NCBI GenBank assembly: GCA_965655095.1
Contig: OZ296654.1
Span: 71,920,001 to 71,984,000 of the forward strand
Direction of reading: 5' to 3'
Length of the DNA: 64,000 nucleotides
DNA from: Haplodiscus bocki
Lineage: Eukaryota
The position numbers and the translations under genes were made by a program. Positions 1-25,331 of this stretch are shown piece after piece (position 1 is the stretch's first letter; every line of letters starts with the position of its first letter). The notes beneath the pieces are model-generated. The model did no database searches. It was given only the letters and a program-made list of their open reading frames with translations, and was not told the origin of the DNA.

Positions 1-2
1 AT

Positions 3-173
3 CTATCTTCAATGGCTGATGATAATGATGACTCTTCTAGTCCATGCCCCATATGTCCCTTCATTGACTGGGAAGCCGAAGAGGAAGACCCAGTAGATGT
101 GCCAGCTTCCAAAAGAAACAGGAAGCGAACCTGTTTTAGCGAAGGCAGTGACACAGATGAAAATGTGGCCTAA
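3..173 (+). CDS. C-terminal tail of a plus-strand ORF entering from the left of the window (acidic, with an NLS-like KRNRKR); probably a Polinton gene, possibly the pPolB tail
   Basis: Open frame LSSMADDNDDSSSPCPICPFIDWEAEEEDPVDVPASKRNRKRTCFSEGSDTDENVA*, convergent with the protease gene. Identity cannot be established from this fragment. Confidence 0.35.
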   Translation, partial: LSSMADDNDDSSSPCPICPFIDWEAEEEDPVDVPASKRNRKRTCFSEGSDTDENVA

Positions 174-247
174 AAACTAGTTAAGTTTCAACGTCTTCGC
201 AACAGAGTCTTGCCTTAAACATTAAATTCATTCCAAATCGACAATAT

Positions 248-816
248 TACCAGGTTCTATATTTATATTGACTATATTCAACATGTTCGTTAAAAAAGCG
301 TACTATATCAATTTCGAAGGTTTGCATTAAAGTCGGATTTTTTGCAGTTTGTAGACGTCGAAGGGTTTCCTGACCAGATAGTGTACTAAATACAAGCAGT
401 ACAGACCACACAGGTTAGAATGAAGATTTTGCAAGGGTGTGTTGATCGCTTGGAATCCTATGCATTTTCCGTACAGCTTCCAGAGTCTGCTGTAGAATTG
501 ATCGTAATAGCATAGAGGCCTGCCGAGGCAATCCCAAACAAAAATTCCAACGTGATCACCATTGTCGATTGCACACAGTAAAATCCAATGCTCACCGCTT
601 TTCTTTGACGGCGTGGAGTTTATTATTTGAAATTTTCTCAGTTTTGAAAATTTCAAGCTTGCTTCCTTTTTCTTTTTGTTGGGGCTGCTGGTTTTTCTGT
701 TTTTCAACGCAGTCTATCCTTCAATTAGGGAAATTGTCCGACGACCAAACGCCACCAAAAATGTGCAATGTACTGGAATACTTTGTTGCAATTTCTGCTA
801 TTGTGAAATTATCCAT
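248..816 (-). pseudogene. Polinton adenain-like cysteine (maturation) protease, frameshifted
   Basis: Catalytic motifs GEHW (His), WDCLG (Asp) and LQNLHSNLCGLYC (Gln/Cys) in ORF 327-707. The N-terminus MDNFTIAEIA...FGGVWSSDNFP starts at ATG 816, overlapping the MCP stop. The C-terminus continues in another frame to ~248. Confidence 0.9.
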
Positions 817-2214
817 CGATTAATGTATTCCTGGAGATGTTTCGGAGAGAATCGATGAACACTTGACTGAACCGCTCGCCAATTAGAAATAATTCAATTG
901 CATCTTCAAGAGCAGTGGAGAAATACAATTTCAAGGTTAGACTCGATCCAGTAAGTTCGGGAAATAAGGTTAAGCTTCTGCTAGCCTCTTCTGTTGATGT
1001 TAGATCGAAAACGAGGAAAAAACGATTGTCTTCGAAATCTTCCAATTTTACACCGTTCCCATTTTTGGTAACCCTAAGAGCCGTAAATCTATTGTAATGA
1101 AGCCTAACAGTGTTGCTCGTGTCTATTGGTGTCCCAACCAAGGGCACCCCGTTGCCGGGCTGTACTTCTACACGCTGTAAGTTGATCTTTTGGTATGAAA
1201 AAGACGAATAGTTCAAAGCTGTACTTCGAAACAGTGAAATTTTGAGCATGCACAAAGTTAACCTTCTGATTGGCTCCGTTCCAAACACGTTTTCATTCAA
1301 AAAACAGCTTTGACCTGCTTGTATGATGAAACTTCTGTTCAAATTTTCAATGTAGGGGTACATAGCCGAACTCTTCACGAGAGCTTACTCAATCGACAAT
1401 TTCACACTGTCCGTAACCACTACTTTCCTCACAAAAAGAGAAGCTTTCTCAATAATTGCTTGCACTTTACCATCAAGCGCCTTAGCTTCGTCAACGGTTC
1501 CCTTCATAAAAAGCAACGTGTTATTGGGAGAACGGAAAAGTCGTAAATGAAGTGTGACGCCGGCACCAAAAGTTTCTCGCAGTCAAAAAAGTCAATATGG
1601 AATGCTCCATAGAGCTCGGTCGTGCATTGTTTTTGGCGATCAAAATCAGCGTACAATTTATTGAACTGTTGATTTTGCTCACTTGTTTTTGCCAAGTAAT
1701 CATATCCCTGACACTTTGTCCAAGTTTGCTTTCCGTCGGTGTTAGCTGTGAGTTCGGTTTCGATGAACACAGCATGAAAAAAACAGTTGTTGCTGTGTGA
1801 AATGAGTTTCCCGTTCAAATACAATTCAGCGTGAGAGAACAATGTGTGAAGCGTGTTGTTCGGAAAAACTGTTGGATACTCATCGACTTTGGCGCGGGTC
1901 TTCCCGTCCTCCGTGTAGACGCCAACTTTTACTCTCAACAGAATACGATTCAAGTCGATCAAGTTTTTTGCTTCAGCTGTTACAAAAAAGTCCAACTGGG
2001 GGCCTCTACATCCTACATGTGGGAAAACCTCTTGATCGTAAGAACCTTCGTAATTGATTAACACGTTGGGCTTCTCAAAAAAATGCAGAGCGCTGTGAGT
2101 GACCGGGCTCGCAATTTCCATTGCACTACCAGAAAAAGTCGTTGTTGTTCCTGCTGTTGGTACGGCCGGATTGCTTGCTATTTTCCTTGGTTGTCGTTGT
2201 GGTTTCACTATCAA
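809..2214 (-). pseudogene. Polinton major capsid protein (double jelly-roll), frameshifted near 1560
   Basis: ORFs 1504-2214 and 809-1378 join through a frameshift. Motifs SALHFFE, LIDLNRILL, PNNTLHTLFSHAELYLNG, FFDCEKLLVP|GVTLHLRLFRS and FFLVFDLT...LTLKLYFSTAL...IDSLRNI match Polinton MCPs. Confidence 0.9.
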
Positions 2215-2816
2215 GCAAACTGAACTTCAGACAGAATATCTGACCGACTTCTCTTGGCGGGACTGGATTTGGAAATGATTTGTGTCGTTGTTGATTCGGA
2301 CAATGATGCTGCTGAAATGTTCAGTAGCTTTCGATTAGGACTGCCGGTCCGCCGCGGGTCTGCTCCGGCCACCCGCTTGCGCGCCATCCGGCCGCCTGGC
2401 ACCCGTCCGCCGCCGGAACGCGCCGCCCCCTGCGGTGCAACGCTGGCACTGGCCGAGCGGCCTGCAAATCTCGGCGCCGAGGTCTTTACAGTTTTCTTGG
2501 TAGCAGTCTTCGCAACATGTTTTAACAATTTGCCATTGGGTCTCTTCTTGCCGGCCAAAATCTGACCAATTTCAGGTATTGCCGCTTCCAACAAATTTTT
2601 TCCAAGTTGTTTAGCTACCGTCAGAATGTACCTCCGCACAACTGGAAGTGCCACTCTTCCGATTCGCATGGCGAACGCGCCCAAGCCACCAGCACCCGCT
2701 CCCACTTGGAGTGCGGGGCCGCTAAACGAGGTGTTTTGGTGAATTGCATGATGAAGATTGTGGTTACTTCGTATTCGAGAATGATAATGAGCATCCATCT
2801 TTTTGTGTGTGATCAC
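2211..2816 (-). CDS. Basic core/membrane-active virion protein (adenovirus pVII/pX-like) with a QxGxG protease site
   Basis: Intact 201-aa ORF with FSGPALQVGAGAGGLGAF, then amphipathic helices (VAKQLGKNLLEAA) and an Arg/Lys-rich, GC-rich tail. It lies between the penton and MCP genes, as in Polintons. Confidence 0.75.
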   Translation of the reverse strand: MITHKKMDAHYHSRIRSNHNLHHAIHQNTSFSGPALQVGAGAGGLGAFAMRIGRVALPVVRRYILTVAKQLGKNLLEAAIPEIGQILAGKKRPNGKLLKHVAKTATKKTVKTSAPRFAGRSASASVAPQGAARSGGGRVPGGRMARKRVAGADPRRTGSPNRKLLNISAASLSESTTTQIISKSSPAKRSRSDILSEVQFA

Positions 2817-2975
2817 CTAATTTAACATACATACACACGACTCATTTTTGATAATGATGATTAAACGGTTGGTACAACTGTTTGGTTCCGTGACTGATTG
2901 TCAAATGGCGTGGACTAGAGAGAAGAGGAATAATCAACCTTCTCCGCTTGGTTGTCTCTCGGTCAATCGTTCTCG

Positions 2976-4006
2976 TCAACATGGCTTTGTCCCAAGTGCC
3001 AAAGTAATGCTTGTGCAACCGCAGCTCAAAAAGGGCATCCTTTGACCCATTTCATTGACCAGAGTCAGAGTGATTGATTGAAATTGTGATTTTTATATTC
3101 GCTTCCACTGCAAGTTTGAAAAACTCCTGTGGTTCACTTCTTTCCTTTCTCGTTGGTCCGTCCATGACAAGCTTTCAAGAGGAATGGAAAGCAACACCGC
3201 AGTTTGTGTGTCACCCAGGACCTCATTTTGAACCAAGTCGCAATACAAAAACACTGTGTGATTTCCGGCTTCCAAGTCAACTGGCCACTGACCTGAGTTC
3301 TTTACAAATTCGATATCTCTTTGATTTTGCTGATCGTCTAGGCAGTTTCCATCAAAGTAATTTTTTGACTCCTGTCTCTGCTCGCCGTCTTGGCAGTCTA
3401 TGATTGTGGTCAAGCAGTATGTTTTTCAAATCCTATGATTTTGCTCGGATAACCAAACCGTTTTGCTCCAGATTCCCCCAAAACTTAACGTGAAGTTCTT
3501 GCGTCACCCTATCAACGTTCCACGAATTATTTGTTGATCGTGATGTTGTATCTGTAGGGTGCTGAGTTGTTGGCGGGAAGTTTTTCATTGTCGCACTTTT
3601 GACTATGGCCTGCATGATATCATCAATGGATGAATAGCAACCTGGCTTTATATAGCGTACTTCTGGAGCAGTGAACGTCAATGCTGGTTTCTCTGCTCTA
3701 AACTGTCGGGGCACTCTCATTGACACAATACCTGGTCGTCTGCTTGGAATATTTTTGCTCGGTGATTGATATGGCGGCGGTGACTTTGGGCGCGGCAATT
3801 TTTGAAACAGTTATTTGGCCCTCAGTTACATTGCGAACCATTGCCGACCAAGAAATCTCCAGCTAAGCCACCTGCCAATCCCCGGAGAGAGTCACAGGTG
3901 TCGGTAGGAGTGTTGTGAAACTTGACAGTTTGTTTCCTGGAAATGATTCCATGGACGCATTGGAAATTAAGTTTAGCGTGAATTCAGCACTGCCAGAAGC
4001 AGTCAT
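2976..4006 (-). pseudogene. Polinton minor capsid protein (penton), with stops and frameshifts
   Basis: N-terminus read manually from ATG 4006: MTASGSAEFTLNLISNASMESFPGNKLSSFTTLLPTPVTLSGDWQVA*LEISW. The middle has IKPGCYSSIDDI, and the C-terminus has VFLYCDLVQNEVLGDTQTAVLLSIP and TLVNEMGQRMPF, all typical penton motifs. Confidence 0.88.
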
Positions 4007-4096
4007 GTTTTGGGGAGATGTAAGTGTCTGGTTTGGACAGATTGTTGATGTTACGCGGTTTGATAATTCCAGACACGTGCGCTCGTTTGTTCTTGT

Positions 4097-5246
4097 TCAA
4101 TTAGTTGCGACAAAATTCACGAGTTCAGGTTCATAAAATTTACCTTGTATGATTTCGGTTATGTCCTTCACAACGTACGTCGGCGGATTTTTTTTAGGTA
4201 TGTGTGAAATTTTAAAAAGCTCTTCCGTGAACTGTATCCTGTAACCACGATGAAATGTTTCAATTTTCTTTCGAATGCGAACTCGGTCGCCGACTTTGAA
4301 CTTTGGTCGTTGTGGTGGCACAGTATTACAAAGAGAGATCAAGTAAGGAACGTCTTTTTGTGACACATCGATTGGAGCCAACTTAGTCATACGATTGACA
4401 CTATTGTTAATGACTGAGACAAACTTTTCAAGGTGGTCAATGTATCGATTTGTGTCACGCTCATGTAAGTATTTGAAAATGCTAGTTTTCAAGGTTCTTA
4501 TGTATGTCTCAGCCACAGCAGATTTTGTTTCGCTTCTCGTAGAGTAAATTTCTTTACGATTTTCTTTGCAAAACTTTGCGAATTCACCAGCAAACTCTTT
4601 ACCTTAATCAGCCCATATCTTTTCGGGAAATTTTTTGGTTGCACAAATTTTTGGACCATTTCGTTACCTATCAGTTGAAATAATTTTTTTTCAGCTCTTC
4701 TGAACATGCTTTAGATGTCTTAGACTTAACGCCCACGACCCATAGAAAGCGACTCAAGGTGTCGATCGCCACAAACAGATACCTAACTCACAAATTTTCT
4801 CTGGAAAGTTGTTGCATATCAGCCAAGTCAATAGACCAAACCTCATTCAGTCAATAACTGACAACTTTAAGTCTCGGAAAACGTTTTCGGGTAAGTTTAA
4901 ATTTCGTAAGTTTCACTTGAGTTCAAGTAGCGATTAACATGTTTGAGCGAGCAGTTCGTTGCCCTGGCTAAATTTAAAGGACTACCAAACGCCGTTGTTT
5001 TTTCTGGGTTTGTATAAACATCGTGAATCTTGGTATATTCAACTGTGAACGGATCATCATCTTCAATCATAACTCGACTTCTTGAACATTTTGAACATAG
5101 AAAGTTGTCATTATAATCAGTTTTGGTTTCCAACCCTGAACAAGTGAAGTGAACCCACACACATGGCATCACACCGTAGGGTTTTGTTTTGATCCTTTAC
5201 CCATCCGCTTTTGGCAGCACCCGCAGAAGCATTTCTTTGGCGCCAT
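4097..5246 (-). pseudogene. Polinton rve (DDE) integrase with an apparent N-terminal PHD finger, frameshifted
   Basis: Read across frames: YTNPEKTTAFGS, VWSIDLADMQ, YLFVAIDTLSRFLW, PEKIWAD*GKEF, TKSAVAETYIRTLK, NNSVNRMTKLAP, PKFKVGDRVRI, GKFYEPEL. Upstream Cys/His pattern CGCC...RC...WVHFTC...FLCSKC. Confidence 0.92.
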
Positions 5247-5262
5247 TTGTCGAACAGTACAT

Positions 5263-5812
5263 TCAGAGAGTCAGCCAACTGCTGGGGGCTTCAGTGTCGA
5301 GTTTGAGACGTTTGCTTGGGGATTCTAAGTACGCTGTCCGGTTTTGGATTCTAGAACTCGTCTGTCTAGCGTAAGTGTTTGCCAGCAGAAAATGCGGCAG
5401 AGCAAGTATCTCAACCAAATTGAGAATTTGTTTGGGCATTTGTTTAGTATTCACTTGGAGAGCAGTTAGGAAGTCAGTTATACCTATTGATGTCTCCTGT
5501 TCATCGAGGAAAATGTTTTGATTTATATCGTCAACGGTGACGCGGTTGTTTTTTTTGGATGGCCTTCAAGATTTGCCTTGACCGTTCAATTTTTCCTCCA
5601 GCTATTCCGGATTGAAGTAGGCCGGCTAAAACTCTGTCTGGTGTATTGTTGTGGGGATAGTCAGTGTTTACTTGTGACGTCGATGTTTCTTTTTTTTGTT
5701 TCTTCTGATCCTGAAACCTTGAGTTCAAATTGATTTGAGCAATCAACGCTTGTTACTTGTCGATAGGCGGATTCGTGGTTGCTTCACTTTCGCTGTTTAA
5801 AGAGGTTGATGC
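5263..5812 (-). pseudogene. 3' part of a conserved Polinton ORF upstream of the integrase, interrupted by the LINE
   Basis: Reads ...NIFLDEQETSIGITDFLTALQVNTKQMPKQILNLVEILALPHFLLAN...WLTL* and joins the 5' part at 10637-10790 across the TSD. Confidence 0.6.
5798..5812 (+). repeat. Left target-site duplication of the LINE
   Basis: TAAAGAGGTTGATGC, identical to 10637-10651. The empty site reads TTT/AAAG, resembling the L1-type TT/AAAA endonuclease site. Confidence 0.9.
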
Positions 5813-7156
5813 ATTTGTCTTGAGTTTTCTTATCGCGGTTTGAATTTCTATCAGTGTAATTTCTTCATCTAAAGCATTGGTTGAGTCAAGAGGTATCTTC
5901 TTACTGAATTTTCGAAGGACGTCAAACCTTTTCGAACAATCCATTTCTTCGTCAGAATAGAGACTTATATAAAAAGATGCGAACTCCTCCAAAATCACAT
6001 GAGACAGTTCCATCTGACCTTTTTAATTCACTGATAACAGTGGAAGGGTGTCTTTTATTTGCCCACTTTTCAACTTCGCGAGGGTTTCCTTCATACGTTT
6101 CCAGCATACTGTTTTTGATCGTTCTGAGTAGTTCTCCGCACTCTTCATTTTCTAGTTCTGTTAGTTGCTGTTTGGCTTCTTTTGCTTCGCTAGAGGTCTC
6201 TACGTTTTCATTTATTGCCTGGAGTAACCTTTGTCGGTATGCTCTTCTGACTCTATTTCGATTGATGCTAATGCTTCTGAGGGAGTCACGCAGCAGCTGT
6301 TTTTTGCGTCGTAGCTAATGTTAAGCTTCAGGACTGACCCAATAAGTTCTGATATGACTTTGTGATTTTTGTCTAAAATGTTGTTATTGAGTCGCCAGAC
6401 ACCAGGTCCTATCTCCATAGAAAAAGGTGCTTTCAAATGTATTTCCAATATGCTGTGATCACTGAGGTCCCTGTCATGCATAATGAAGTTTTCGATTAAA
6501 TCGGTTTTGTTTGTGAAGATATAATCAATCCGCGTATCAGTTCCTGTCTTTTTGCAGGTATGAGTGGGCGCTCTTCTTTTGCCAGTAACCGCTGCATCAT
6601 CTAATAAAAGCTCTTCGATAATAGGAATCACTTTTCGGAAAACCATAAGGTGATTATCTTTCGAAATTGTTCCAGTTGTCTGCGCGCCTTTCCGATCCTG
6701 CTTCACATTATTGTATGCATTCAGATCTCCCATTAATAAAACAGTGGTCTCTGGGTGATCTCCTGTCAGTATAAAAATAACACCGTCTCTTAGTACTTGA
6801 CAAAATTTGATGTATTCCATTTTTCGTATGTCGGTACTAATAGTAATTACGTTTTGCTTAGGAAATTTAGAGATCAGACAAGCTTCGTTTCTAAATAGTA
6901 AAAAGGACTCAAGATTGTTCGTCCAAATTGTAAGTAGTCCACCGCTCTTACCACACGATGGTTGAAAATCATAGGAGAAATTAAAAAATAAAAGACACCT
7001 CTCAATGTTTTTGTTTAGCTGTTCAGTTTTAATTTCCTGAAAACAGAAAATACATGAGTCTTTCTTTTGATTTTTCAAGGTTTTTCCAAAGAATTTGATG
7101 AGTTTCATTTCTTTATCTAAGCCATTGCAGTTCCATGTTGCAACTTTAAAAGCCAT
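5813..7156 (-). pseudogene. LINE ORF2 N-terminal half: APE-type endonuclease plus linker (inverted segment)
   Basis: MAFKVATWNCNGL, FCFQEIK, KSGGLLTIW, LLMGDLNA, TRIDYIF, LSDHSIL, GPGVWRLNNNIL. After a frameshift near 6300 it continues to FYISLYS...LDEEITLIEIQTAIRKLKTNAS, which normally lies just before the RT. Confidence 0.92.
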
Positions 7157-7173
7157 TGTTTGCTTCGGTAGCT

Positions 7174-8390
7174 TCAGACAAAGCTGATAGGTTGGTTTTG
7201 GTTGATTTCTTTCATTTTGGATTCATTCTTCTTCGACGAGTTTCTGTTGCTTCTTTGAATCATTCCAATAGACTCGAGCTTGCTTTCATTTTGCCTATCG
7301 GTTGGCTCCAGTTCAGTTTGGTTCAATTTATGTTCAGTTTCATTTCTTGTGCGTGAGATGAACTGACTCATTGTCTCTTCCTCAGCACTTTGAGTAGTTT
7401 CTTGAAATTCTGCTGGTTTGGGGCTCCGTGGCTCCTCCATGTTATCTCCAATGTGATTTCTATTGTTTTTGTCACCTGCTGACGGTAAGGGTGGATCTTC
7501 TTCACTATCATCATTTGTTTCCTGATGCGTGTATTTTTCGATTGTACGAGGCGTCATCTCTGTTGCTTCTTTAATTTGTTTGCGATTAGTGTAACTTTGT
7601 TTCTTCTCAGTCCGCTTTAATGAGAAATATGCTTCATGATGACCTCGAGCATTATTACCAAGTGTTTGGCAATATGCGCATGTCAATAATGATGGAATGT
7701 TGCAGTAGAAGTCCATCTCATATAGCTGGAAAGATTTTGTACAGCTTTGCTCTGCCCAATTTTTCAGAGCTTCTTCTTCATTTTCGTTTGACACCATAAC
7801 CTTGCCATAAGCAAAGCCTGTATAAACGAATCCTTGGTCTTCGGTTAAAAACTTTTCTTTCATAATTGGCGATAACTTCTTCACATAAGGAAAATTAATG
7901 CAGTCGTAGATATCTTCACCCTCAAAGAAATGAGGAAGCGAGCGAAAATGTACAGTTACTTCCCTCGGGAAGCTCCTTAAGGAATACTCGCGTGGGCCCC
8001 ATGCTTTGATGTGTTTCCGTCGCACATCTATGCCATTTAATTTCAATTCCAATATGCTACTTTGCATTTTTGGAGGTGCGATCAAGCGAACCGCATGCAA
8101 TTTGTTTCCATCTTTCTTTTCAATAATAGTCTTGAGAATTGTTATGTGTTTCTGTCTTCTGCCGGAAGCTTTTTCCGAAAACTTGCAACTGTTTCCGTAA
8201 AAAGATTTTGTTGTTCTTCTTTGTTTTGAAAAATTTCCCTTGTGAAAGGAAGGATAAATTCTGCTTTAATTGCCCCAAAATCCTTTTTGTCGTTCACTTG
8301 ACGTCGCTCCGTTGCTTCTGCGAAGGTCTTTTGCGCTTCTGCATTCCCTGTGCTTCCTTCACATAAATATTCTGTGGAGACTTGATACAT
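7174..8390 (-). pseudogene. LINE ORF1 (gag-like nucleic-acid chaperone) with a degenerate zinc knuckle
   Basis: ORFs 8142-8390 and 7174-8100 lie directly upstream of the endonuclease. They contain VTVHFRSLP, GFVYTG and CAYC...GHHEAY(F), followed by a charged low-complexity tail. Confidence 0.75.
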
Positions 8391-8757
8391 TTTGGATGAT
8401 TATTTCTTCTTTTTAGGTGATTCCAGCGCAAGAATGCGCAGCGGACAATGTTTTATTTGTCTTTACTTTGGTTATAATTTATTCTGTTCACACGGAATAA
8501 TTGCTCGTTTTGAGCAGTATACACAATATGCTTCGCTGTGCCTAAATAATAATAGAGTACAGGCGCGGCGAATAATTACGTAATAGCAATGGCAACTGAT
8601 CAAGATGTAACAACTTCGCGAAAACAGGTTGGAGTAACTGAGCGAACAGCATGTCATGCCTCTGGTAAAGTTCCGAAGAGAGGCCATCGGGACCGGGTAA
8701 GACCTCTAGTTGCTCTGCAAATCGAGAAAAATTTTCGCCTTTTACTAAAGTTTTCCC

Positions 8758-10552
8758 CTTCTATGATTACGTGGATTAATTAGTTAACATTCTTTCGCTC
8801 GCGGAAGCCTGGGAAGGCGGAAAACTTCCGAAGTCCTTCTCAAATGCGACGATAAAATTATTGCCTAAGAAAGCAGGACTGAAAGAAGCGAAAGATTTCC
8901 GCCCTATCAGCCTTATGAACGCTGATCAAAAAATCTTACCACATATTCTTGCCAGAAGGTTGAAGACTGTCCTACATTATGTGATCGGTGAGGAACAGGT
9001 GGCTTGTATAAAAGGACGATCAATACATAAAGGCATTCAAGATCTTGAATTTCTCCTCCAGGCGGAAGAAACCAATTGGTGCTTAGTTACGATAGACTTT
9101 GTTAAAGCATTTGATCGTGTTGACAGGGAATATATGTTTGAAATGCTTCGGAAAATTGGGTTGCCTGAACGCCTAATTACCATAATTGAAAAACTATAGC
9201 AAAACAACAGCAAATATAAGTGTGAACGGTTTTCTTAGTAACAGAAAAAAACTGGACGAGGTGTAAGACAAGGATGTCCTTTGTCGGCACTTTTGTTCAA
9301 CATTTCCTTAGAGCCGCTCTTAGATGATCTCAGACGAAATTTCTGGTACAGTTATCATGCAGAGCGAAGACTGATAGCTTATGCTGAAGATCTCTCAGTT
9401 TACGTTCACAAGAATGATTTGGAGTCTCTGTTCAAACGACTCCAAATTTTCTGCAGCGGTACGCATTTATTGATTCAACAAGGCAAATGCCACATGTACC
9501 AATGCAATCAACCAGAAACCGACGGACAAACAAAAACTCTCAAAATTCTGGGTACATTCAAAGGTGACCCGTTCTCATGTGAGCAAAAGAGTGAAGAGAT
9601 GATTGTCAAAGCACTCAACGAATCGCATCTCTTCTTCAATCGATGGATGTCATTGAGGGCAAAGGCAATTGCTATGAACACCTTTGTAATTCCAAAACTT
9701 TTGCATATAGCACGTCACCAACGAATTCGCAAACGAGTGCTTGTTGAATATAAAAGACGGAGCTTCTCTGTATTATGGGGATCCGGTAGAAAGACAGAAA
9801 TAGCTTTGTGTTTCTCAGAACGACCGGTAGGGAAAGGTGGTATCGGTTGGCCTAACCTTCTTTGTCACATTATTACAGCAAAATTGACCGACCTTCTGAC
9901 TAGCTTCTGTTCAGACTCAACTACTAGACAATAAGCTATGCACAATTGGAGAATGAAGAAACGATACCGTAGACAACTGGAAGCTGATCTCAAAATGGTC
10001 AAAATGAACATCCTGTGAATAAACGAAGAAGACGTTGTCCTAGCTAACAGGAATGAAGTTCGTTTCATATTGCGGAAGGATAAAACCTATAAAGAACTGT
10101 ACGGTTTCTGCTGGGAGTCTTCAAACAAGGAAACCTCGTGGGACATGCGAATATCGACCTCATGTCAAAAGTTCAAGCTCACGCCAAACAAGTTTCTTTC
10201 TTGTTCTAAACCGATTTGGAGGGACAAAAAACTGACCGCCTTTGAAAAAAATACTATCTACAAATTACTGTTCAACTGTATCAGGGACAAAGACGTACTA
10301 TGGAACAAAGGCGTAAAGGCGCACCCTATATGCTACCTATGTGATGTAAACTTTGAAAATCTCGAACATCTCCTCGGGGGATGCATGATAACTCAAAAAT
10401 ACTTGCAGCCCTGTGGTATCAAATCTATCGAGGACGTGTTTCAAAAACCTACAACTACTACTTTCAAAACGGTTGTAACAATTGTTGCTGGTGCCTGGGA
10501 AGACGATGCAGAAAAATGTTTGTGGAAACTAGAAACTCTTCTCAATTTGTGA
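8758..10552 (+). pseudogene. LINE ORF2 C-terminal half: reverse transcriptase plus zf-RVT/CCHC
   Basis: FYD...WEGGKLPKSFSNATIKLLPKK, DFRPISLMNADQKIL, IDFVKAFDRVD, RGVRQGCPLSALLF, YAED (mutated YADD), KILG, KGGIG, CYLCDVNFENLEHLLGGC. Several stops and frameshifts. Confidence 0.93.
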
Positions 10553-10636
10553 TTGAATGTTCTGTAATATTCATTAATTGTATGATTTAGGTTTATTATA
10601 GCAGTTTGTATTTTAGTAATTCAGATCTTTACATAC

Positions 10637-10651
10637 TAAAGAGGTTGATGC
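10637..10651 (+). repeat. Right target-site duplication of the LINE
   Basis: TAAAGAGGTTGATGC directly after a short AT-rich 3' UTR, with no long poly(A). Confidence 0.9.
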
Positions 10652-10790
10652 TGGTACCTGAGCGAGGAAATGCTGCTTGTTTTTCGCAATAATCCAGACG
10701 TTTGCTTTCGTGTTGTGGTTGATTTTTCAGAAAGCAGTACTCGTCGTTAGTTATTAGAAAAAACTCTTTAAGGCTACCGTTTGATGTCAT
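10637..10790 (-). pseudogene. 5' part of the LINE-interrupted Polinton ORF
   Basis: ATG at 10790 (MTSNGSLKEFFLITNDEY...) overlaps the end of ORF 10774-10992 and, with one frameshift, reads through the TSD into ...PASTSLNSESEATTNPP. Confidence 0.55.
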
Positions 10791-11010
10791 GGTAAGACGC
10801 TAAATGACCTAGCACCGACGGAAGAAGGAATTTCAATAAACGAAAACCTCTAGGAGAAGCCAACATCTGACGCTTACGTTGGAGTGAAATGTTTTTCTTT
10901 GAACAGAGAGTCGCTATAATGCTCTTTTCTCGTGAAAGTGTTGATATTTTTGCTTGCATATTTTTCTCTAGTTTGACATTTCCTTTTATCACGTTAAAGA
11001 TGCAGTCGTT
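10774..11010 (-). pseudogene. Small conserved basic Polinton protein downstream of the ATPase (N-terminus truncated)
   Basis: DCIFNVIKGNVKL...KSIIATLCSKKNISLQRKRQML...GFRLLKFLLPSVL resembles the CxxNxxKGNV...SLxxKRxxL pattern of a conserved Polinton ORF. Confidence 0.6.
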
Positions 11011-11039
11011 TCAGTGTGAGAGGAAAATTATTGTACAAA

Positions 11040-11739
11040 TCAACTGTATAAAAATCCGGTAAACTCATTGCATAAGTTCAGGTACAGTTGATCTGTTGAA
11101 CAGTAGAACAACGAAGGCTCGTCACCAGAACACTGGGAATAGTACCTCACTGTTTTACTACTTCTCACGTCTAAATCAATCATCAAATGACCGAAGGGTT
11201 TGCGAGTAGCTCTTTTATATGCTTCCATTGCGAGGTGTCGGTCACCTAATTGACGTCCCAAAATACCAATCTGCTCCGAGTCTCTTGGGCTATTGAAGAG
11301 GATAATCTGCGTGACATTCAAGTCGATTGTTTTTGAACCTTTTGTCTGTTGAAAAAGATTGTGTCTTAAAACCACCAAATGGATGTTGCGATGTCGACCG
11401 GCAATAACTAGTGTTAGAAATTCTTTGCTTTTTGCCGCTTCTTCGAATAAATCATCCACAACTAACAAGATCCGTTTCTTCTGCGCTTAAACTTTTTCCA
11501 AAGACTTCCATTCTAATCCTTGAATAAATACAATATCAACATATGTTGACTCGGAATTAATTAAAATAGTTCCATAATGTTCTTGATAATGGTAATAAAA
11601 GTAGATAATTTTGTCGAAGCTCGGTGAAAATTTTTGCCTGTTTGACAATCATACGCCCAATCAGTCTGCTTTTCCCCGATCCAGCAGGTTCCACAACAGA
11701 AACGAAGCAGTGAGGTTGGGTACTAATTCGCTTGTTCAT
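11040..11739 (-). pseudogene. A32/FtsK-like DNA packaging ATPase, frameshifted
   Basis: Walker A (E)PAGSGKS, Walker B LLVVDDL, AGRHRNIHLVVLRHNLFQQ, IDLNVTQIILFNSPRD, and KPFGHLMIDL. Confidence 0.93.
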
Positions 11740-11805
11740 TACTTTGGAGTGGGTGAAATATGACCTGAGCAAGCTCACAAGAGAGCTAGTATCCCTGATG
11801 CGAAT

Positions 11806-12159
11806 CTATTGTCCGCCTCGCAAAATGTGAGGAAAGTTATACAAAAAAATGACAAGAATCAAAATAACTAAGTGATGACTTATTATTACGAGTGAAGACC
11901 GATCGAGCTTTAAATCGTCACCGCCGCAAAGATTTACACAAAATGGTGGTCGCTCCTGATCATTTCCATCAAAAACAAGGCGATCGATATTACATTGAGA
12001 AATGTTTGCGAAATCAGGTTCATCCACCACCTGTTGTTCTTGATCTACACAAAGCTCACTGTAATAACCACAGGAACGCTTCGAGTCGACGTCTTGCAGG
12101 GCAAACAGATTGTTCGCTGGAAACGTTGCCTGTGCTGGAGAAACCCAACCGTTTTCCAC
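11806..12159 (-). CDS. Polinton accessory ORF, hypothetical, with a C-terminal hydrophobic helix
   Basis: 117-aa ORF co-oriented in the cluster, ending ...LVIISHHLVILILVIFLYNF. Confidence 0.35.
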   Translation of the reverse strand: MENGWVSPAQATFPANNLFALQDVDSKRSCGYYSELCVDQEQQVVDEPDFANISQCNIDRLVFDGNDQERPPFCVNLCGGDDLKLDRSSLVIISHHLVILILVIFLYNFPHILRGGQ

Positions 12160-12178
12160 TTCGAATAAATTGGAATGG

Positions 12179-12585
12179 TTAAAACGGAAAGTTATCGAAA
12201 TAATCAGGCTTCAAAAATTTCATAAACGTCCAAAATAAAATTCCCGAAAAATGACCCAAGAGCATGCTGTTTTTGGAATACTTTTCATCAGATGAGGTAT
12301 AAACATAACCAGGTCCCACGTTGTTGACACTCCTCATATAACCATAAGCATCATGAAAAACTGCATGCATTCGTAAAAATTTGAAAACTTTAAGTAGTTG
12401 TGCAGAAGGCTGTCGCCTGCTCCGGAATTGCCACCAAAAGATGCCCTGGAATTAACTTCATTGAAATCTATTGTTTTGTCTACATAGAGACAAACTGCAA
12501 GAAAAGCGTTTTTAAATGTTGTGTTTTTTGGGAACCAGTATGTTACTTTCACAAAGTTTTCGCAAATGTCCTTCGAAGAAAACAT
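12179..12585 (-). pseudogene. Putative phospholipase A2-like accessory protein, frameshifted at ~12365
   Basis: The joined ORFs give SFGGNSGAGDS...CMHAVFHDAYGYMRSVNNVGPGYVY...LLGHFSGILFW, a Gly-rich loop followed by an HD-x-Y helix. Confidence 0.5.
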
Positions 12586-12636
12586 TTAAGTAAGCAAGTT
12601 TGAATTAGGAGAAGCGTCTGTCTCAGAACAAAACTT

Positions 12637-13372
12637 TTACAAAAATGATGTATCAATAATTGTGTCTTCATCACAAACAGAAAAAAGCTGCAAAGCGTAG
12701 TTGTTGCCTTCTTGAGCCGTCGAACGGATGATTTGAAGTGGCTGAGTCATACATTCGAAACACGTGCATTGAGCATTTGTTACCCCCAAATCAATATTCA
12801 ATGTCCGGCTGTGCGCAGTCACGTAAAATCGCCCTCATCCTTTCTGAAGAAGATCAATGTATGACAATATGCTGTCTTTGAAAGGTGCATCTGAACTTTC
12901 AAGCTCGAGCAGACGTTGAAAGAGAAACAATGCTTTCTCTGACCCAACGGATGCGCCCAGTGAATTGTGTTTTTCGTACTCCCACACACTTTTGAATTGG
13001 CAACCAAGTCCTCCTGTGGGCTTTTGATTCATGAGGGACTTCATCTTCTCGCCTCTTACTGAAATGGCACTGGCGGCCGATTTGTTGTTTGTTTCTGCTC
13101 TGAGAAAGTTTTCCGGATATGACTGTCATCAATTTTACATGCGAATTGTTTGTTGTCGATAGAACTTGAAGACTAGTCTGCTTCAGAAAAGTTTCCACTT
13201 CAGCACAATCAGGAAGATAAAGCAGAGTATGATGATGGTTCGAGGGCATCGTTTGGCAAATTTCTTCCAATTGCCCGCAGCTGAATTCACTCTGAAGGTG
13301 TTCTCGGCTTAAATATTGAGCGTTGTGCGAGCACATGAGAATTTGTAGAGCATTGCACAGACTGGGAGGCAT
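12637..13372 (-). pseudogene. Unidentified Polinton accessory ORFs (fragmented)
   Basis: Overlapping minus-strand ORFs 12899-13372, 12835-13044 and 12637-12822 are co-oriented with the cluster but show no recognisable motif. Confidence 0.3.
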
Positions 13373-13634
13373 CGAATCAGGAAACGTATTTCGTGTGGTT
13401 TCAAAAGCTTCTCAATAGTGGTAGTTTCGTCCGTATGAAATAGGTGCAACTAAAAGTTCGACGGAACTTCTCTGAAAACAGATGTCATTTGTTTCAACTA
13501 GCGAATATTTTCAGCAACTGATTGTGGTATTAAGTCTTTGCAAAATGAAGCGTCTCACAGTTGTTATCTCACCTACCTCTTAATAAGGAATTTTCCATTC
13601 GGTCTCTAGGAGTTTTCCATGAAAATGGAAGAAA

Positions 13635-13709
13635 AGCACACTTGGCACAGTCACGATCTTTGATAAGTCCCTGTTTGCAACTAGTCCACGTGAGTGTGCC
13701 AAGTGTGCT
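13635..13709. repeat. 21-bp-arm inverted repeat (hairpin) at the presumed Polinton terminus
   Basis: AGCACACTTGGCACAGTCACG (13635-13655) pairs with CGTGAGTGTGCCAAGTGTGCT (13689-13709) at 20 of 21 positions, with a 33-nt loop. Confidence 0.85.
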
Positions 13710-15117
13710 AGCAACCTGTACTGTATGAACGCGATACTGCTGTTACTGTTTTCCTAGGTTTTCCTTTTGGATTGAATTCAACACTTATCGAATGCTCGAG
13801 AAAAAATTTATTTTACGATGTTGGTGCTTCATGCTTTGGAAGGTTAATTTAGCATCATTTAATCTTTTCTCACGGGGTCCAATGAATAAATTCCACTCTC
13901 TGAATCGACAAAGTCTCGAGAGTGAATTATTTCACTCTTTGTAGAACCAGTTGTCACAGTTTGACTGATGAACAATAGAAAATTTGCTTTGTCAACGAAT
14001 TTTCACGGTTGGTTTACTTACTGTGTACTTAGTCAACAAAATTCAGTTTCGGTTGAATTTGTAATTTGACCTTTTTGACTTAGAAAATTTTCGGTTTGGG
14101 AGTCAAAAATTGCAGCAAACCCCCTCCCCTCCTTCCTTTACTACTAACATTTAACCAATGAGATACTTTGAAAGTCAGAATGTAAGTAAAATCGGCAAGT
14201 AAATGTTAAAAACGCGCGCATGCACAAGAGGATTTTCATTCCATATTATAAATTTGACGAAAAAAAAGGAAAAGAGTATACCAAAAACTACTGGTAGGTA
14301 GCCAGTAGGCGTCACGGTATTACGACGATAACTACTGATTGAACAATCAAACAGAAATAATGTAACAAAATTAATTTCGAATAAATTATACAAGTTTCAC
14401 AAATACAGGTAGCAGTTAATTCGCTCAAAATATCAAACAGACGCGCAAGACCGGCCCGAAAAAAGGCCACAAGAGCAAGAGAGCAAATGAATAAATTTTG
14501 CAAGGACACGAGAGCGAACGAACAAAAACTAGGAACAGTAGTACCTAGGAACAAATGCGAACTGGAAGCAGATCACAGTAGGCAGCGAAAGAAGTCCGCA
14601 AAACCCGGTGATATACAACTTGCCTCCACTACTGTAATGATTACACTACTTCGACGTCTCAGACGATGGTTGGTAGCTCGAAAAAGCGAAAAAATAAACA
14701 GAATCAATGGATGAGCCTGGTTTTTATTAGCTGACCAGGAAGGAACCAGTATCTGTGATCAAATTTTCGAACGATACATTTAATTGCGTAATAAACGATA
14801 ACAACTGAAAACAACAATTGTCGTCAGAAAGAAGTCTTGAAAGTATATGCATTATATCCATTTCTATCTACAAATGCAAGATATACACAAAAAGGGGGAT
14901 AGCTTGCAGACTCCCATAAAACACTAAGCATTTTTCGAGAAAAATTTTTGATGTGATTAAGAGTTTGGGAAACTAGCTAAATTCGCTACTTTCAGAAAAT
15001 TTTTTCTTTTGCTCCCAAAGCCAACCTTTTCATCAACAAAAGCATCAAGTATGAAAGAGTATGGGCTAATGTTCTGAAGAGTTTCTTCAAGCTCCAATCT
15101 TGACAGAGAAACTACAT

Positions 15118-15220
15118 AGAGCCTGCGGCGGCACCGAACAAAGACTCGAGTTCAGGCCACTCCCTCATCTTTGGTCAAACCTAGGAACTTCTGTCAGTTG
15201 CGAATGGTGTAACGGCTGAC
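15118..15220 (+). mobile_element. tRNA-derived SINE fragment (same family as 61556-61680)
   Basis: Shares GGCCAC.CCCT..TCTTTGGTCAAA..CTAGGAACTT.TGTCAGTTG.GAA.GG with the 61.6-kb copy. Confidence 0.6.
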
Positions 15221-16099
15221 CCAAATCTTAACAACAGATTCAAGCTTGTGCCGGTTCTCGGTTTGTCCTGCTTTCCACTAGCAAAACAGGATTGTGGAGA
15301 TTCAAAGGACTGCATCTTCCAATTGTTTCCGATTGATTCTGAAACAGCTCCATTAGATAAGAATCGTCAAAGTAAGGAATAGCTACCTCAAAAACTTCTT
15401 CGGACTGGAAAATCTTGGTGAAAATAGTCCCAACTATGACTACATTGTCTTTAGCACCGATTGTAGAAAGTTGACCGATTTAAATCTCAAGTTAACTATC
15501 AACCGATCACTAGCGTTATTCAAAACTGGTCTAACCAACTATTAGAACATACTGTTTACATAGCAGACAGCAAAAAAAATTGAAATTATAAAGCGTGAAT
15601 AACAGGTGGATTGGTGGCGACCAACATGTAAATTAGCAAGTGGCTGCCAAAAAGTAGTAGGTGGAGGTAAAACACTTCATGAAGGAATACACATGACATT
15701 CAGGAAATGCTCAGAATACCGAAATCCATCTCATTGAATTTCAAAGTAATTTACTCAAATAAAAAGATACCGCAAAAGAGTAAATTGCAACCCAACAAGC
15801 ACAATAGATGCGGAACCACATGAGTTAAGTGGGTGCGGCGTGAACGATAGCTTTACAGGGTCACAAGGCACAGGAAACAAAAAATCACGCTAAAAACACC
15901 AAATTTGCACAATAAATCTCAAGAATATAGCAAATTCGTTCAGTGTAAAGCATTGACTACTGGTAAAATGGGTCGGTATGACAAATATCAGGAATCTTGA
16001 ATTAAAACCGGTCTAATTAATATTTTTAAAGTATGAATTAAGCAATAAAGAGATGAGGAAATGGATGAAATCCATTAAAACTTGACAGAAGACATAATT

Positions 16100-18050
16100 C
16101 TAAAAGGACGCGGTTGAGGAAGATTTTAAAATTTTGAAAAGCAGATTTAGTTTTCGAATGTCTCGGCCGATGCACCATGTTGAAGACGGGTTTGTATAGA
16201 AATCTTAGCACAAAATGACATTTTGACTTTGAGATATAGCATTCTGAAGGTCAGTATAGGATTAGAACCGAGTTTCACTAATCTGACAGGTTAAGGGGTG
16301 AAAATGCTAGAAGTCAGCGAATTGAATTTCTCACATGCGAGGCAAATGTTAGGGCCTCATGTGGGGTCAATTCAAAAGATGAAACAATTTTACTAAGTTC
16401 GACAAGTTTTCAAGTTTTGGGATTTTCCAAGTCTCTGGCGTCAACGAATGGATAGGACAAAAGAATTAGGACTGTGTTATAAGAATTGCTATCCCAAGTG
16501 CAAAAAGTTCAAAATGTGAACAGGAACCCTTATTTTGCGAAGTCTCAACATAATCAAGACTTTAATCGCCGATATGGACCGAGAGTCAGGGAGTTTTGAA
16601 TTTTCCAACAGAGTTAGTGGTTTTTCGGTAGATTCGCCAACAAAGAAGTCCCTTGAAACCCGATTTTGTACCCAAAGAACTACCTAACAGACTATCCATA
16701 ATATTCCAATACATTTTCCGAAAGCGGGGATGATGAGTCAACAACGGAGGGCTCCCATCAAACAGAGGGAGGGAAATCGATAAAAACATATTTGACAAGA
16801 AGACGCAACTGAGTAGTTTCTGGACTAAAATTTGCAAGTGAGGGGTTTTCATCCAAAACGAACCCCATTTCTGCCAAACAAAAATGAAGTTAGTTTCAGG
16901 AAATACCATGAAACTGGCAAGTGTGACTGAGCAGAGGATAATGTTCGGATGATGTCGAAATCGTGACTTTTGAGCCAAATGAGAAACTCTATTGGGAATA
17001 CGGCCACAAACATGCATTTTCAAAACCTATTTCAGACATCTACTCCTCAAAACCATTGAACAGTCTACCCACTCCTCGCCCAATTATCACACTCAGTGCT
17101 TTGATGAATGGCTAGTGGATAGCTTCATTCTAAATGATGGACGTTGAGTAAAAATTCATTGAAAATAGACGGCACGGAAAAATCTCTTTATTCAAAATAG
17201 AAAGATACTTCTCGCACTTACGACTCTTAATCTTGCAATATCTTTGTATCACAGCCCTTTTTGACTCAATAAGCGTGAGAGAGCCGTACACGGCGTTCTT
17301 ATGGGATCACGTGAGATTTTCACCAAAAATGGGCAAGAAAAAGTGGTGTTCTCGAAAGTTTTGATCACAAAAAGCACCGCAAAACCGGTGTTGTAAACTG
17401 AAAGAATAGTGAAGTAGGCCATTCGTTGACGCATGTTTTTCCAGTTTGTTGATTGATGCATGAGGACTGTATTGCTTCAAAAAATGATGCACCTTCAGAA
17501 AATCAAACTTGAAAAAAAGAACCCAAAATTCAAGTTACATGTTTGGATCCTTCTCCGATTGAAAACACTAGATCTTGTAAGAAATACTTAAAATGTTTTT
17601 AAAACTATCATATAAGTGATTATTATGACTGAGCACACGAAAGTGTTCAAACGATGTCAAAAACGTAACTTTTTGACTAAAAGTATGTATTTTTCGGGCA
17701 TTTCGGCGGCAAAGAAGCACCATACAGACCGATTTCAAACCTAAAGAACAGAACTGTGGAACTGGTCATCCATTAACTCACTGTTTTTTCCATTTGGCGG
17801 GTTGACGAATGAGCACTTGATGGCTTCAATCAAAACGATGTACTGTGAGAAAAACATATTTGAAAGAAGACACCACTGAAAAATTCGCGAAATTAAAGTC
17901 ACGAGTGTAATTCTCGCACCAAGAACCCCATATCTTGCACGAAATTAATTATTTCTCCAGAAACTTTTTAAATTAATGGTTGTGACATAGTGAAAAAGTA
18001 TTCGGCCGTTTTGTCCAAAAAGCATATTTAAAATCGAATTTGGCTCTCCT
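16100..18050. repeat. Highly degenerate tandem repeat, period ~355 bp
   Basis: A related block (AAAACATATTTGA.AAGAAGAC...ACTGA...TTCTCGCAC...ATCTTGCA...TGACTGAGCA) recurs near 16783, 17150, 17500 and 17851. Confidence 0.45.
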
Positions 18051-18653
18051 TAATCCTTAATACGGAAATTAATCGGCAAAAAATTCCGAGGCCAGAAACG
18101 AGCTCATGGAGGAGGCAGAATTCATCTCACCACACATCTTGCGCGCATTGTGAACGCTACAACAAAAAACGCGGGTCAACCATAAGCTGCCGCTTGCCAG
18201 CTTAAAAAAAAAACAATTTAAGTGCAATAACTTTTCTACTGGTGCAAAACACGCCCAAAGATTAGATTCATTCGGCTATAAAGTTGAAGATAATCAGAAC
18301 TATTGCTGGTATAATCGCAGTTCGTTGGTGTAAAGGACGCAAGTAGTTTGGTTTCTAATTTTTAGCCCGTAATGTAGACAGACCGTACGCGCGACTTCTA
18401 TAGCCCTAGAAAAACAAAACGAGCTGAACGCGTTCCAGTCCTGCTGATATGAAACAGCTTCATGAATATACTTGAAAAATTTTCAAATACTGTGTCAAGA
18501 TCATTTATGATCAGGCCATACAAAGCAGGAAGATGACCTGGATGTACCCTTTCTCCAATAATTATCTTGATAAGTAGTATTTGAAAAAATTGTGAAGCAA
18601 AATTCATGAAGATAATCTTGACTTTATGTAAAGCAGCATAACTCATCACTTAC

Positions 18654-18720
18654 CGTAGATGCTGTCTCGAACATACACGAACGTGTTCAACACTTTATCA
18701 TCAAAAGTTGCGAAGATGTT
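18654..18720 (-). CDS. WDR19: WDR19/IFT144 internal exon (NIFATFDDKVLNTFVYVRDSIY-G)
   Basis: 67-bp exon with ttttcAG acceptor and GTaagt donor (phase 1). It matches the vertebrate segment [23 protein letters not shown] and is in frame with the previous exon. Confidence 0.9.
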
Positions 18721-19346
18721 CTGAAAACAAAACACCAAGTGTTGTAACCAATAAATGATCTCCAATATTTTAGTTCATAATATACTGAGAAATTACTCCT
18801 TCGTGAGTTGTTTTTTTTTGTGGAGATCGGTTTGAATGCCTCAAATGATTTCAAATCTTCTACATTTTGTATGATTAATAACGCTTCTAAACAATGAAAG
18901 AAAAGTTATTTTAATCGCCTAATTGTTAAGTTAATATTACGTGTACGTGTAAGGCAACATTAGCAGACACAATCCTTTTGGCAACAAAGTTTTCGAATGT
19001 CTGTACATACACTTGGTCGGATTTCTCTTTCAAGCGAATTTATGACATCATAATATTTTCCAGTCCATAAAATTTTGCATATTATCAACTGTGTTGCAGG
19101 CACAAGAACCAAATAAAAGTGACACCCACAAGAAAATACTTCATCCACGAAATTTTTCTTGGTGCGCGAACTGTAAGACGACTCATACATACATCTTTTG
19201 AGGTTAATGCCTAAACTTTAAGACAACTTCTTCCACGTATATTTATTTACCAACTTTATCCAATTAAGAATAAACTTTGATGCAACCGTGATCTCCAGCT
19301 ACATTGAAGGGCCAGTTGCCGTACACCCTTTGACATTTTTGAATTC

Positions 19347-24935: not shown

Positions 24936-25331
24936 CACGAAGAATTAGTAGAAAGTTTAGTTTAGATCACCGGGATGTCTGGGTAGCATACCATACCTCT
25001 GAACTGTAGCTTCCAATTTGTTACTACAACATTACAACATACAGGCGAATTTGATTCGAAAAACGGATTCACCATCAAAAATGTTGCGGAGCTTGAGCGT
25101 TTGGCAAGTTAGGTAAAATACAACGTTAATGCCGCCTCGTTCATTCTTATCAGAGCTGGTTGCAAAAATGGTTTACTTTCAGAAAACAAATTGGCTCAGG
25201 TTTTATTTGCTAATTAATTACTGAAATGAGTTTCTCCGAATTTTAAATTAGGTCCGAATCTGTCTTTGGTCCGCAACGGTTTTCGGTGCAAATTGTCGTA
25301 GAGCTGTCGCTCATATACTTTTTTTGCTACT

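What the first reader, a model, noticed from the sequence alone, without database searches (positions are those of the whole stretch)
5798..10651. Twin-priming 5' inversion in an invertebrate L1/Tx1-clade LINE
Seen: ORF1 and the endonuclease/linker are on minus (8390 to 5813) and end at ...AIRKLKTNAS. The RT resumes on plus at ~8758 with FYD...GKLPKSF, so only the ~8-codon PGxDG segment is missing. The whole structure is bounded by a perfect 15-bp TSD, and the inversion starts exactly at the left TSD. The TSD 3' end (TGATGC) is complementary to GCATCA (Ala-Ser), the inferred element sequence at the internal priming site. Established: this geometry (inverted 5' segment, small junction deletion, TSD-RNA microhomology) defines twin priming, which is best documented for mammalian L1 and thought uncommon elsewhere. 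Inference: this invertebrate LINE family also uses second-strand priming, and here it copied almost to the 5' end.
Basis: partly seen in the sequence, partly recalled or inferred. Interest (0 to 1): 0.78.

Follow-up and report, generated by a model that had tools for sequence, protein, structure and literature searches.

The report
Twin-primed LINE insertion, four blocks
A retrotransposon copy sits in this non-mammalian genome with its front part flipped, which fits "twin priming", a mechanism documented almost only for mammalian L1; no sequence is missing, and a 187-base piece at the centre is flipped a second time.

Summary
The core observation holds. A 4.8-kb LINE (5813-10636) lies between perfect 15-bp target-site duplications. 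A 95%-identical paralogous host sequence (L006) carries the target once, uninterrupted. ORF1 and the endonuclease are on the minus strand and abut the left duplication; the reverse transcriptase is on the plus strand.

All seven other family copies fetched from the same assembly are collinear, so the arrangement is specific to this insertion. The last bases of the left duplication match the element at the inversion point (5 exact, 7 of 9). That motif occurs once, as expected of a primer.

Nothing is missing. The copy has four blocks, not two:
- 5' UTR remainder, ORF1, endonuclease and linker, inverted
- the supposedly missing 84 bases, inverted, at 8615-8698
- reverse transcriptase to the 3' end, direct

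The two inner junctions are a reciprocal, loss-free exchange inside a 5-base repeat (TCGCG).

Best reading: one twin-primed, full-length insertion. Its centre was swapped either by template switches during cDNA synthesis or by a later 187-bp micro-inversion. The copy is decayed. Organism and exact LINE clade are unresolved.

The parts
5798..5812 (.). Left target-site duplication (15 bp). Its last 5 bases (TGATG) are complementary to the element motif CATCA at the inversion point.
   Evidence: (D16)
5813..10636 (.). The whole LINE insertion: four blocks that together contain every base of a full-length family member exactly once.
   Evidence: blocks map to L001 4539-7365 (inverted), 7362-7445 (inverted), 4441-4543 (direct), 7439-9284 (direct)
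5813..8621 (-). Block A, inverted: rest of the 5' UTR, ORF1, and the endonuclease plus linker part of ORF2. It ends in the 5-base exchange motif (8617-8621).
7150..8390 (-). ORF1 remnant (415 aa in L001). Broken: 3 frameshifting indels, 1 in-frame indel, 1 stop. No Pfam domain.
5813..7156 (-). ORF2, endonuclease (Exo_endo_phos) and linker portion. 2 frameshifting indels.
8622..8698 (-). No breaks; 100% identical to L001 and L004.
8699..8803 (+). Block C, direct: the first ~100 bases of the 5' UTR, starting within about 3 bases of the family's 5' terminus. It ends in the exchange motif TCGCG (8799-8803).
8804..10636 (+). Block D, direct: the reverse transcriptase and C-terminal (zf-RVT-like) portion of ORF2 plus the 3' UTR. 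The ORF2 part has 2 frameshifting indels and 3 stops. It ends ...TTTACATAC with no A-tail.
10637..10651 (.). Right target-site duplication (15 bp)
1..5797 (-). Left flank: host repeat, 94.7% identical to L006. It includes a paralog of an integrase-like gene (window 4900-5169). Probably a decayed Polinton/Maverick.
10652..15118 (-). Right flank: the same host repeat, 95.7% identical to L006. It has a weak A32-type ATPase hit at 11040-11468.

Best explanation
One retrotransposition event of a full-length RNA, made by twin priming.

Inferred course:
1. The endonuclease nicked the bottom strand at the left edge of the 15-bp target, and cDNA 1 started at the RNA 3' end.
2. The top strand was cut 15 bases downstream before cDNA 1 was finished.
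3. The freed top-strand 3' end (...TGATGC) annealed to CAUCA inside ORF2 and primed cDNA 2 towards the RNA 5' end. This gives the inverted block that abuts the left duplication.
4. The two growing cDNAs then exchanged templates at a 5-base repeat (UCGCG) that occurs about 100 bases from the RNA 5' end and about 80 bases 3' of the internal priming site. cDNA 1 jumped from the downstream repeat to the upstream one and copied the first ~100 bases. cDNA 2, on reaching the upstream repeat, jumped to the downstream one and copied the ~80 bases left uncopied, ending at its own priming site.
5. The two cDNA ends were joined directly.

Every RNA base was therefore copied exactly once, giving the order inverted A, inverted B, direct C, direct D.

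Shown: the duplications and empty site, the four blocks and their exact contiguity, the two microhomologies, and the collinearity of the other copies.
Inferred: the order of events, and that the exchange happened during cDNA synthesis rather than later.

Twin priming as the source of the large inversion, under either timing of the central exchange, I put at about 0.8.
For: - Target-site duplication and empty site.
- Block map against collinear L001, L002, L004 and L005.
- At the inversion point all six relatives read ...AAAT-ACATCA-CCCGG... (one has G for the last A of the hexamer). The reverse complement of the duplication supplies CATCA, block A stops just before it and block B starts just after it, so there is no gap and at most 1 base of overlap.
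- The motif is present once, and the duplication's last base (C) differs from the family's base there. Both are expected of a target-derived primer.
- Chance of 5 or more matching bases at a random joint is about 0.001.
- Both inner junctions lie inside TCGCG, reciprocal, with no base lost or gained.
- The exchanged piece straddles the joint of the two cDNAs. That is expected if it arose while they were being made, and a coincidence otherwise.
- The duplication is 15 bp, and family duplications are 8-15 bp. In cell assays L1 5' inversions go with 10-20 bp duplications, peaking near 15 (PMC4245944).
Against: - Two template jumps at the same 5-base motif are needed.
- An RNA helix between the two motifs, which would have coupled the jumps, is not supported. 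In L001 the duplex energy is -17.4 kcal/mol against a random-pair median of -11.3, and 11% of random pairs are as good or better.
- The sequence alone cannot tell a switch during cDNA synthesis from a later DNA inversion.
- There is only one such copy and no read-level support.
- I found no precedent for this four-block form in the papers read. The search was not exhaustive.
Confidence: 0.45

Rival explanations
1. Two steps. An ordinary twin-primed, full-length insertion (inverted A and C, then direct B and D, with the two cDNA ends joined directly) was followed, at some later time, by a DNA-level micro-inversion of the central 187 bp. The inversion ran between the 5-base inverted repeats CGCGA and TCGCG, for instance by replication template switching.
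For: The observed order equals the canonical twin-priming product with exactly that 187-bp piece inverted. Both copies of the 5-base motif are kept, one at each junction, as in a repeat-mediated inversion. The copy is old enough to have collected 7 frameshifting indels, 1 in-frame indel and 4 stops, so there was time for a second event.
Against: Five bases is very short for a spontaneous inversion. Nothing but chance would place a rare micro-inversion across the joint of the two cDNAs, since 187 bp is about 4% of a 4.8-kb element.
Confidence: 0.33
2. No twin priming. An ordinary full-length, collinear insertion was later rearranged at the DNA level by two inversions or one complex repair event.
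For: The blocks are a permutation of a complete element. Short inverted repeats exist at the breakpoints: TGATG in the duplication against CATCA in ORF2, and TCGCG twice.
Against: The first inversion would need a breakpoint exactly at the boundary between the duplication and the element's 5' terminus. A repeat-mediated inversion keeps both repeat copies, yet CATCA/TGATG is present only once. The base next to it is the target's C, not the family's base. Both facts fit a primer, not a recombination.
Confidence: 0.05
3. Assembly artefact: the contig mis-joins or mis-orients reads within a repeated element.
For: The family has at least 8 copies at 92-96% identity in the assembly. The junction-spanning ORFs occur on this contig only. 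Reads could not be examined.
Against: Each element base is present exactly once. All junctions fall on microhomologies with no loss or gain. The composite is framed by a duplication of a target that is single in the paralog. Misassemblies do not usually give reciprocal, conservative junctions.
Confidence: 0.05
4. Two independent insertions of the family at one spot, one inverted and one direct.
For: Opposite orientations of two parts of the same family.
Against: There is only one pair of duplications. The inverted part lacks a 3' end, which LINE copies keep. The parts are exactly complementary in element coordinates, with no overlap or gap.
Confidence: 0.02

Closest known systems
5'-inverted L1 insertions of humans and mice, explained by twin priming (Ostertag and Kazazian 2001, as summarised in PMC2837659 and PMC12016303)
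   Same: One pair of target-site duplications around an inverted 5' part and a direct 3' part of one element. The inverted part abuts the upstream duplication. There is microhomology between the overhang and the internal priming site. The duplication is about 15 bp. The two parts meet at adjacent element coordinates.
   Different: The element is a distant relative (about 26% identity to the nearest named vertebrate protein) with no A-tail. The copy is full length, whereas in human germline polymorphisms the inverted cDNA has a median of 751 bp and the non-inverted one 571 bp. Nothing is deleted or duplicated at the joint. The centre carries a reciprocal 187-bp exchange, giving four blocks.
LINE retrotransposition assays in human and chicken cells (PMC4245944)
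   Same: That study links 5' inversion to long (10-20 bp) duplications and reports one 5'-inverted insert of a non-L1 LINE (zebrafish Nimb-2_DR). The family here also makes long duplications (8-15 bp).
   Different: In that study inversions were otherwise seen only for human L1 in human cells. Here the case is a natural genomic copy in an unidentified non-mammalian genome.
Template jumping (copy choice) by reverse transcriptases at short repeats, and microhomology-mediated template switching in DNA replication (FoSTeS/MMBIR). Named from general knowledge; MMBIR is mentioned in PMC8082928.
   Same: Junctions fall inside a 5-base repeat with no loss or gain.
   Different: The exchange here is reciprocal between two nascent strands or two sites of one insert. 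Which polymerase made it cannot be told from the sequence.

Membership tests
Twin-primed (5'-inverted) LINE insertion | One pair of target-site duplications encloses both the inverted and the direct part, and the target is single at an empty site | tested here: met
   15/15 repeat. Paralog L006 has the target once, with 14/15 bases identical.
Twin-primed (5'-inverted) LINE insertion | The inverted part is the 5' portion and abuts the upstream duplication; the direct part carries the 3' end and abuts the downstream duplication | tested here: met
Twin-primed (5'-inverted) LINE insertion | Complementarity between the 3' end of the upstream duplication and the element at the internal priming site | tested here: met
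   5 exact bases, 7 of 9, against six of six relatives. The motif is present once.
Twin-primed (5'-inverted) LINE insertion | The two parts are neighbouring stretches of one element (small gap or overlap at the priming site) | tested here: met
   Gap 0, overlap at most 1 base at the priming site. Both halves are 92-96% identical to the same copies.
Twin-primed (5'-inverted) LINE insertion | Only two blocks with a single internal junction | tested here: not met
   Four blocks. The central 187 bp is exchanged at a 5-base repeat.
Twin-primed (5'-inverted) LINE insertion | The arrangement is specific to the insertion, not the family's native structure | tested here: met
   Seven of seven other copies are collinear: 3 near full length and 4 truncated at the 5' end.
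Twin-primed (5'-inverted) LINE insertion | Two reverse-transcription starts on one RNA at the target | not testable with these tools
   This is a process, not a sequence feature.
L1/Tx1 group of LINEs | ORF2 with an N-terminal APE-type endonuclease followed by a reverse transcriptase | tested here: met
   P0012: Exo_endo_phos at residues 6-234, RVT_1 at 503-732
L1/Tx1 group of LINEs | Reverse transcriptase closest to L1 ORF2p | tested here: inconclusive
   The best solved structure is human L1 ORF2p (E 1.8e-55) against R2 (about 1e-27). The structure bank holds no CR1, RTE, Jockey or I-clade proteins, and no phylogeny was made.
L1/Tx1 group of LINEs | C-terminal zinc-binding domain (zf-RVT) | tested here: inconclusive
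   19.4 bits (P0012) and 26 bits (window ORF), both below the cut-off of 27.5
L1/Tx1 group of LINEs | Recognisable L1-type ORF1 domains | tested here: not met
   The intact 415-aa ORF1 of L001 has no Pfam hit at E up to 0.1.
L1/Tx1 group of LINEs | Poly(A) tail (mammalian L1) | tested here: not met
   Eight of eight copies end ...TTTACAT(A)(C) without an A-tract.
Polinton/Maverick (host of the insertion) | Protein-primed DNA polymerase B, retroviral-type integrase, A32-type ATPase | tested here: inconclusive
   All three are hit, but each below Pfam's cut-off: DNA_pol_B_2 24.3 and 14.8 bits on two collinear ORFs, rve 17.7 bits, Pox_A32 16.3 bits.
Polinton/Maverick (host of the insertion) | Capsid genes, protease, terminal inverted repeats | not tested
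   Not pursued, because the host is only context for the finding.

The most novel reading that the evidence does not exclude
The four-block, loss-free order records two reverse transcriptases working at the same time on one RNA molecule and swapping templates at a 5-base repeat, each finishing the stretch the other left. That would be direct sequence evidence, from a non-mammalian L1-like element, that second-strand cleavage and internal priming precede completion of the first cDNA, and that the two cDNAs of twin priming share one template.
Probability: 0.4. Interest if true: 0.6.

Novelty: new member of a known kind. Interest (0 to 1): 0.45.

Why it matters
5' inversions are documented almost only for mammalian L1. 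In cell assays they depended on both the LINE and the host (PMC4245944). [quoted passage not shown] It also fits the proposed link to long target-site overhangs.

The exact bookkeeping at this locus is unusually informative for a single copy. The full-length RNA is copied once, with no base lost at the priming site. This constrains the timing of second-strand cleavage relative to first-strand synthesis.

It remains one decayed copy, so it is an anecdote until a census is made.

Tried and rejected
- Other copies in the window: none. Self-comparison found only the element itself.
- RNA families in the window: none.
- An RNA helix between the two exchange motifs as the coupling device: not supported. 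11% of random window pairs in L001 pair as well. The motif search mislocated the upstream site in L002 and L004, which lack the exact motif there, so those two numbers are void.
- 3' flanks of L002 and L008 as tandem LINE copies: rejected.
- More copies or a second assembly of the junctions through protein clusters: none beyond the eight contigs.
- Organism: not identified. A 42%-identical relative lies in NCBI assembly GCA_013332895.1, and no paper names it or the ENA analysis.
- The founding twin-priming paper (PMC311219) is not held, so I relied on later papers' summaries. One literature search was badly framed and useless.
- The large representative protein search, structure prediction and fold search were not used, because the family scans and the word search answered the question.
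- Steps left out: the host flanks were not joined to model the empty site. They were compared apart with the natural paralog.
Full report
**What is there**

Between the two copies, Pfam finds an AP-type endonuclease on the minus strand (ORF 6212-7156). On the plus strand it finds reverse transcriptase (8861-9199, 9281-9934) and a sub-threshold zf-RVT hit (10070-10552). The opposite orientation of the two ORF2 halves is therefore real.

**Relatives**

The endonuclease ORF belongs to a 90%-identity cluster of 14 proteins, all from one ENA assembly (ERZ26859043) that also holds the window's contig. I fetched the seven other contigs. L001 carries an intact-looking copy with an ORF1 of 415 aa and an ORF2 of 1064 aa (P0012), framed by its own 11-13 bp duplication.

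Using L001 4437-9284 as a yardstick, all seven copies are collinear:
- L001, L002 and L004 are near full length.
- L005, L007, L008 and L009 are truncated at the 5' end.

The window copy is the only rearranged one.

**The real anatomy**

Against L001 the window copy falls into four blocks, not two:

| Block | Window | L001 | Orientation | Content |
|---|---|---|---|---|
| A | 5813-8621 | 4539-7365 | inverted | rest of 5' UTR, ORF1, endonuclease, linker |
| B | 8615-8698 | 7362-7445 | inverted | ORF2 stretch after the inversion point; 100% identical to L001 |
| C | 8699-8803 | 4441-4543 | direct | first ~100 bases of the 5' UTR |
| D | 8799-10636 | 7439-9284 | direct | reverse transcriptase to the 3' end |

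- The same map is obtained with L002, L004 and L005.
- Every base of a full-length element is present once.
- ORF2 resumes at about 8804.

**The junctions**

- Left duplication to block A. All six relatives that cover the site read AAAT, then ACATCA (one has G for the last A), then CCCGG. Read on the minus strand, the window gives AAAT followed by the reverse complement of the duplication, which begins GCATCA. The exact microhomology is therefore 5 bases, or 7 of 9 if extended.
- The motif occurs only once in the insert. The duplication's last base is the target's C rather than the family's base. Both are expected if the duplication's 3' end served as a primer on the RNA. Neither is expected of a repeat-mediated DNA inversion, which keeps both repeat copies.
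- Block B begins at the base after the motif, so nothing is lost or repeated there.
- Blocks A/B and C/D. Both joints lie inside the pentamer TCGCG. In L001 it occurs about 100 bases from the 5' end and about 80 bases 3' of the priming site. The exchange is reciprocal with no base lost or gained.
- Blocks B/C. The end of B meets the element's 5' terminus, to within about 3 bases of L001's terminus as defined by L001's own duplication. There is no clear microhomology, so this is a direct joint. PMC4245944 cites earlier studies reporting direct joining for full-length L1 inserts.

**Empty site**

A host gene 640 bases left of the insertion has a 90%-identity paralog on another contig. Compared apart, the window's left flank (1-5812) and right flank (10639-15118) align to L006 15248-9434 and 9446-4973. 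They meet on a single copy of the target, with 14 of 15 bases identical. The 15-mer is therefore a true target-site duplication, and the LINE is a single insert.

**Interpretation**

The order inverted A, inverted B, direct C, direct D equals the canonical twin-priming product of a full-length RNA (inverted A and C, then direct B and D) with the central 187 bases turned round between the two TCGCG motifs. Twin priming explains the following:
- why the large inversion starts exactly at the duplication
- why the microhomology is there and occurs only once
- why the coordinates are contiguous at the priming site

I put twin priming at about 0.8.

For the centre I see two readings that the sequence cannot separate.
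- Same event (0.45). The two nascent cDNAs switched templates at the repeat, each then copying the stretch the other left. This accounts for the exchange sitting on the joint of the two cDNAs and for the loss-free result.
- Later event (0.33). A DNA micro-inversion between the 5-base inverted repeats.

A test of one coupling idea failed to give support. Pairing of the two motifs in the RNA is no better than 11% of random window pairs in L001.

Other rivals and why they rank low:
- Ordinary insertion plus DNA inversions. It needs a breakpoint exactly at the element's terminus, and it predicts two copies of the priming motif.
- Two insertions. The coordinates are complementary, there is a single pair of duplications, and the inverted part has no 3' end.
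- Misassembly. It is unlikely given conservative, reciprocal joints, but untested because reads were not available. The junction-spanning ORFs are singletons in the protein collection.

**State of the copy**

Counted against L001's open frames:

| Gene | Frameshifting indels | In-frame indels | Stops |
|---|---|---|---|
| ORF1 | 3 | 1 | 1 |
| ORF2 | 4 | 0 | 3 |

- ORF2 is also split by the rearrangement into three pieces on two strands.
- Places of the breaks are not listed.
- The block bounds given here are the anatomy under test, not a list of breaks within the reading frames.

**Family and host**

- Among solved structures P0012 is closest to human L1 ORF2p (E 1.8e-55; R2 proteins about 1e-27). 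Its nearest named relatives are only 24-26% identical, from Xenopus and a plant.
- ORF1 has no Pfam domain.
- All eight copies end without an A-tail.
- Duplications in four other copies are 8-14 bp.
- 'L1-like' is fair. 'L1/Tx1 clade' and 'invertebrate' are unproven.
- The host repeat shows sub-threshold hits to protein-primed polymerase B, integrase and A32 ATPase.

**Literature**

- In the held library 106 papers use 'twin priming', and those listed are overwhelmingly about mammalian L1.
- Human rates of 5' inversion are 18-22%.
- PMC4245944 found inversions only for human L1 in human cells, apart from one zebrafish Nimb-2_DR insert, and linked them to 10-20 bp duplications.
- One of eight copies inverted here is compatible with such rates, but the sample is small. 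It is also biased to copies that keep ORF fragments.
- I found no description of the four-block form. The search was not exhaustive.

Noticed in passing
window 21421-33141: Three tandem copies of a ~3.9-kb unit, 98.6-99.1% identical, with 42% A on the plus strand, which explains the strong AT skew at 22-32 kb. It has no long ORFs.
   Followed up: partly
window 1-5797 and 10652-18858; L003 17596-18921; L006 1-15248: The LINE sits in a repeat of about 14 kb or more that has a ~95% paralog on another contig. The repeat has weak, sub-threshold hits to protein-primed DNA polymerase B (two collinear ORFs just left of the window), integrase (rve) and A32-type ATPase. It looks like a decayed Polinton/Maverick. 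The paralogy is interrupted at window 15118-17156.
   Followed up: partly
L008 7465-8054 and 11497-12093: About 590 bp, made of 100 bp of flank plus the first 489 bp of a 5'-truncated copy of the family, occurs twice at 96% identity, on either side of the rest of that copy. The origin is unexplained.
   Followed up: partly
3' ends of the family: window 10628-10636; L001 9277-9284 and the other loci: The family has no A-tail. Eight of eight copies end ...TTTACAT(A), and five are followed by C. In L001, L004 and L009 the last bases overlap the start of the duplication, which suggests priming by short microhomology.
   Followed up: partly
L008 15096-16660: A Ty3/gypsy-type retroelement (PEG10-type capsid, aspartic protease) lies near another copy of the LINE.
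   Followed up: no
window 45510-45673: A tandem array with a 21-base period (7.8 copies, 74% matches), also readable as a 63-base period.
   Followed up: no
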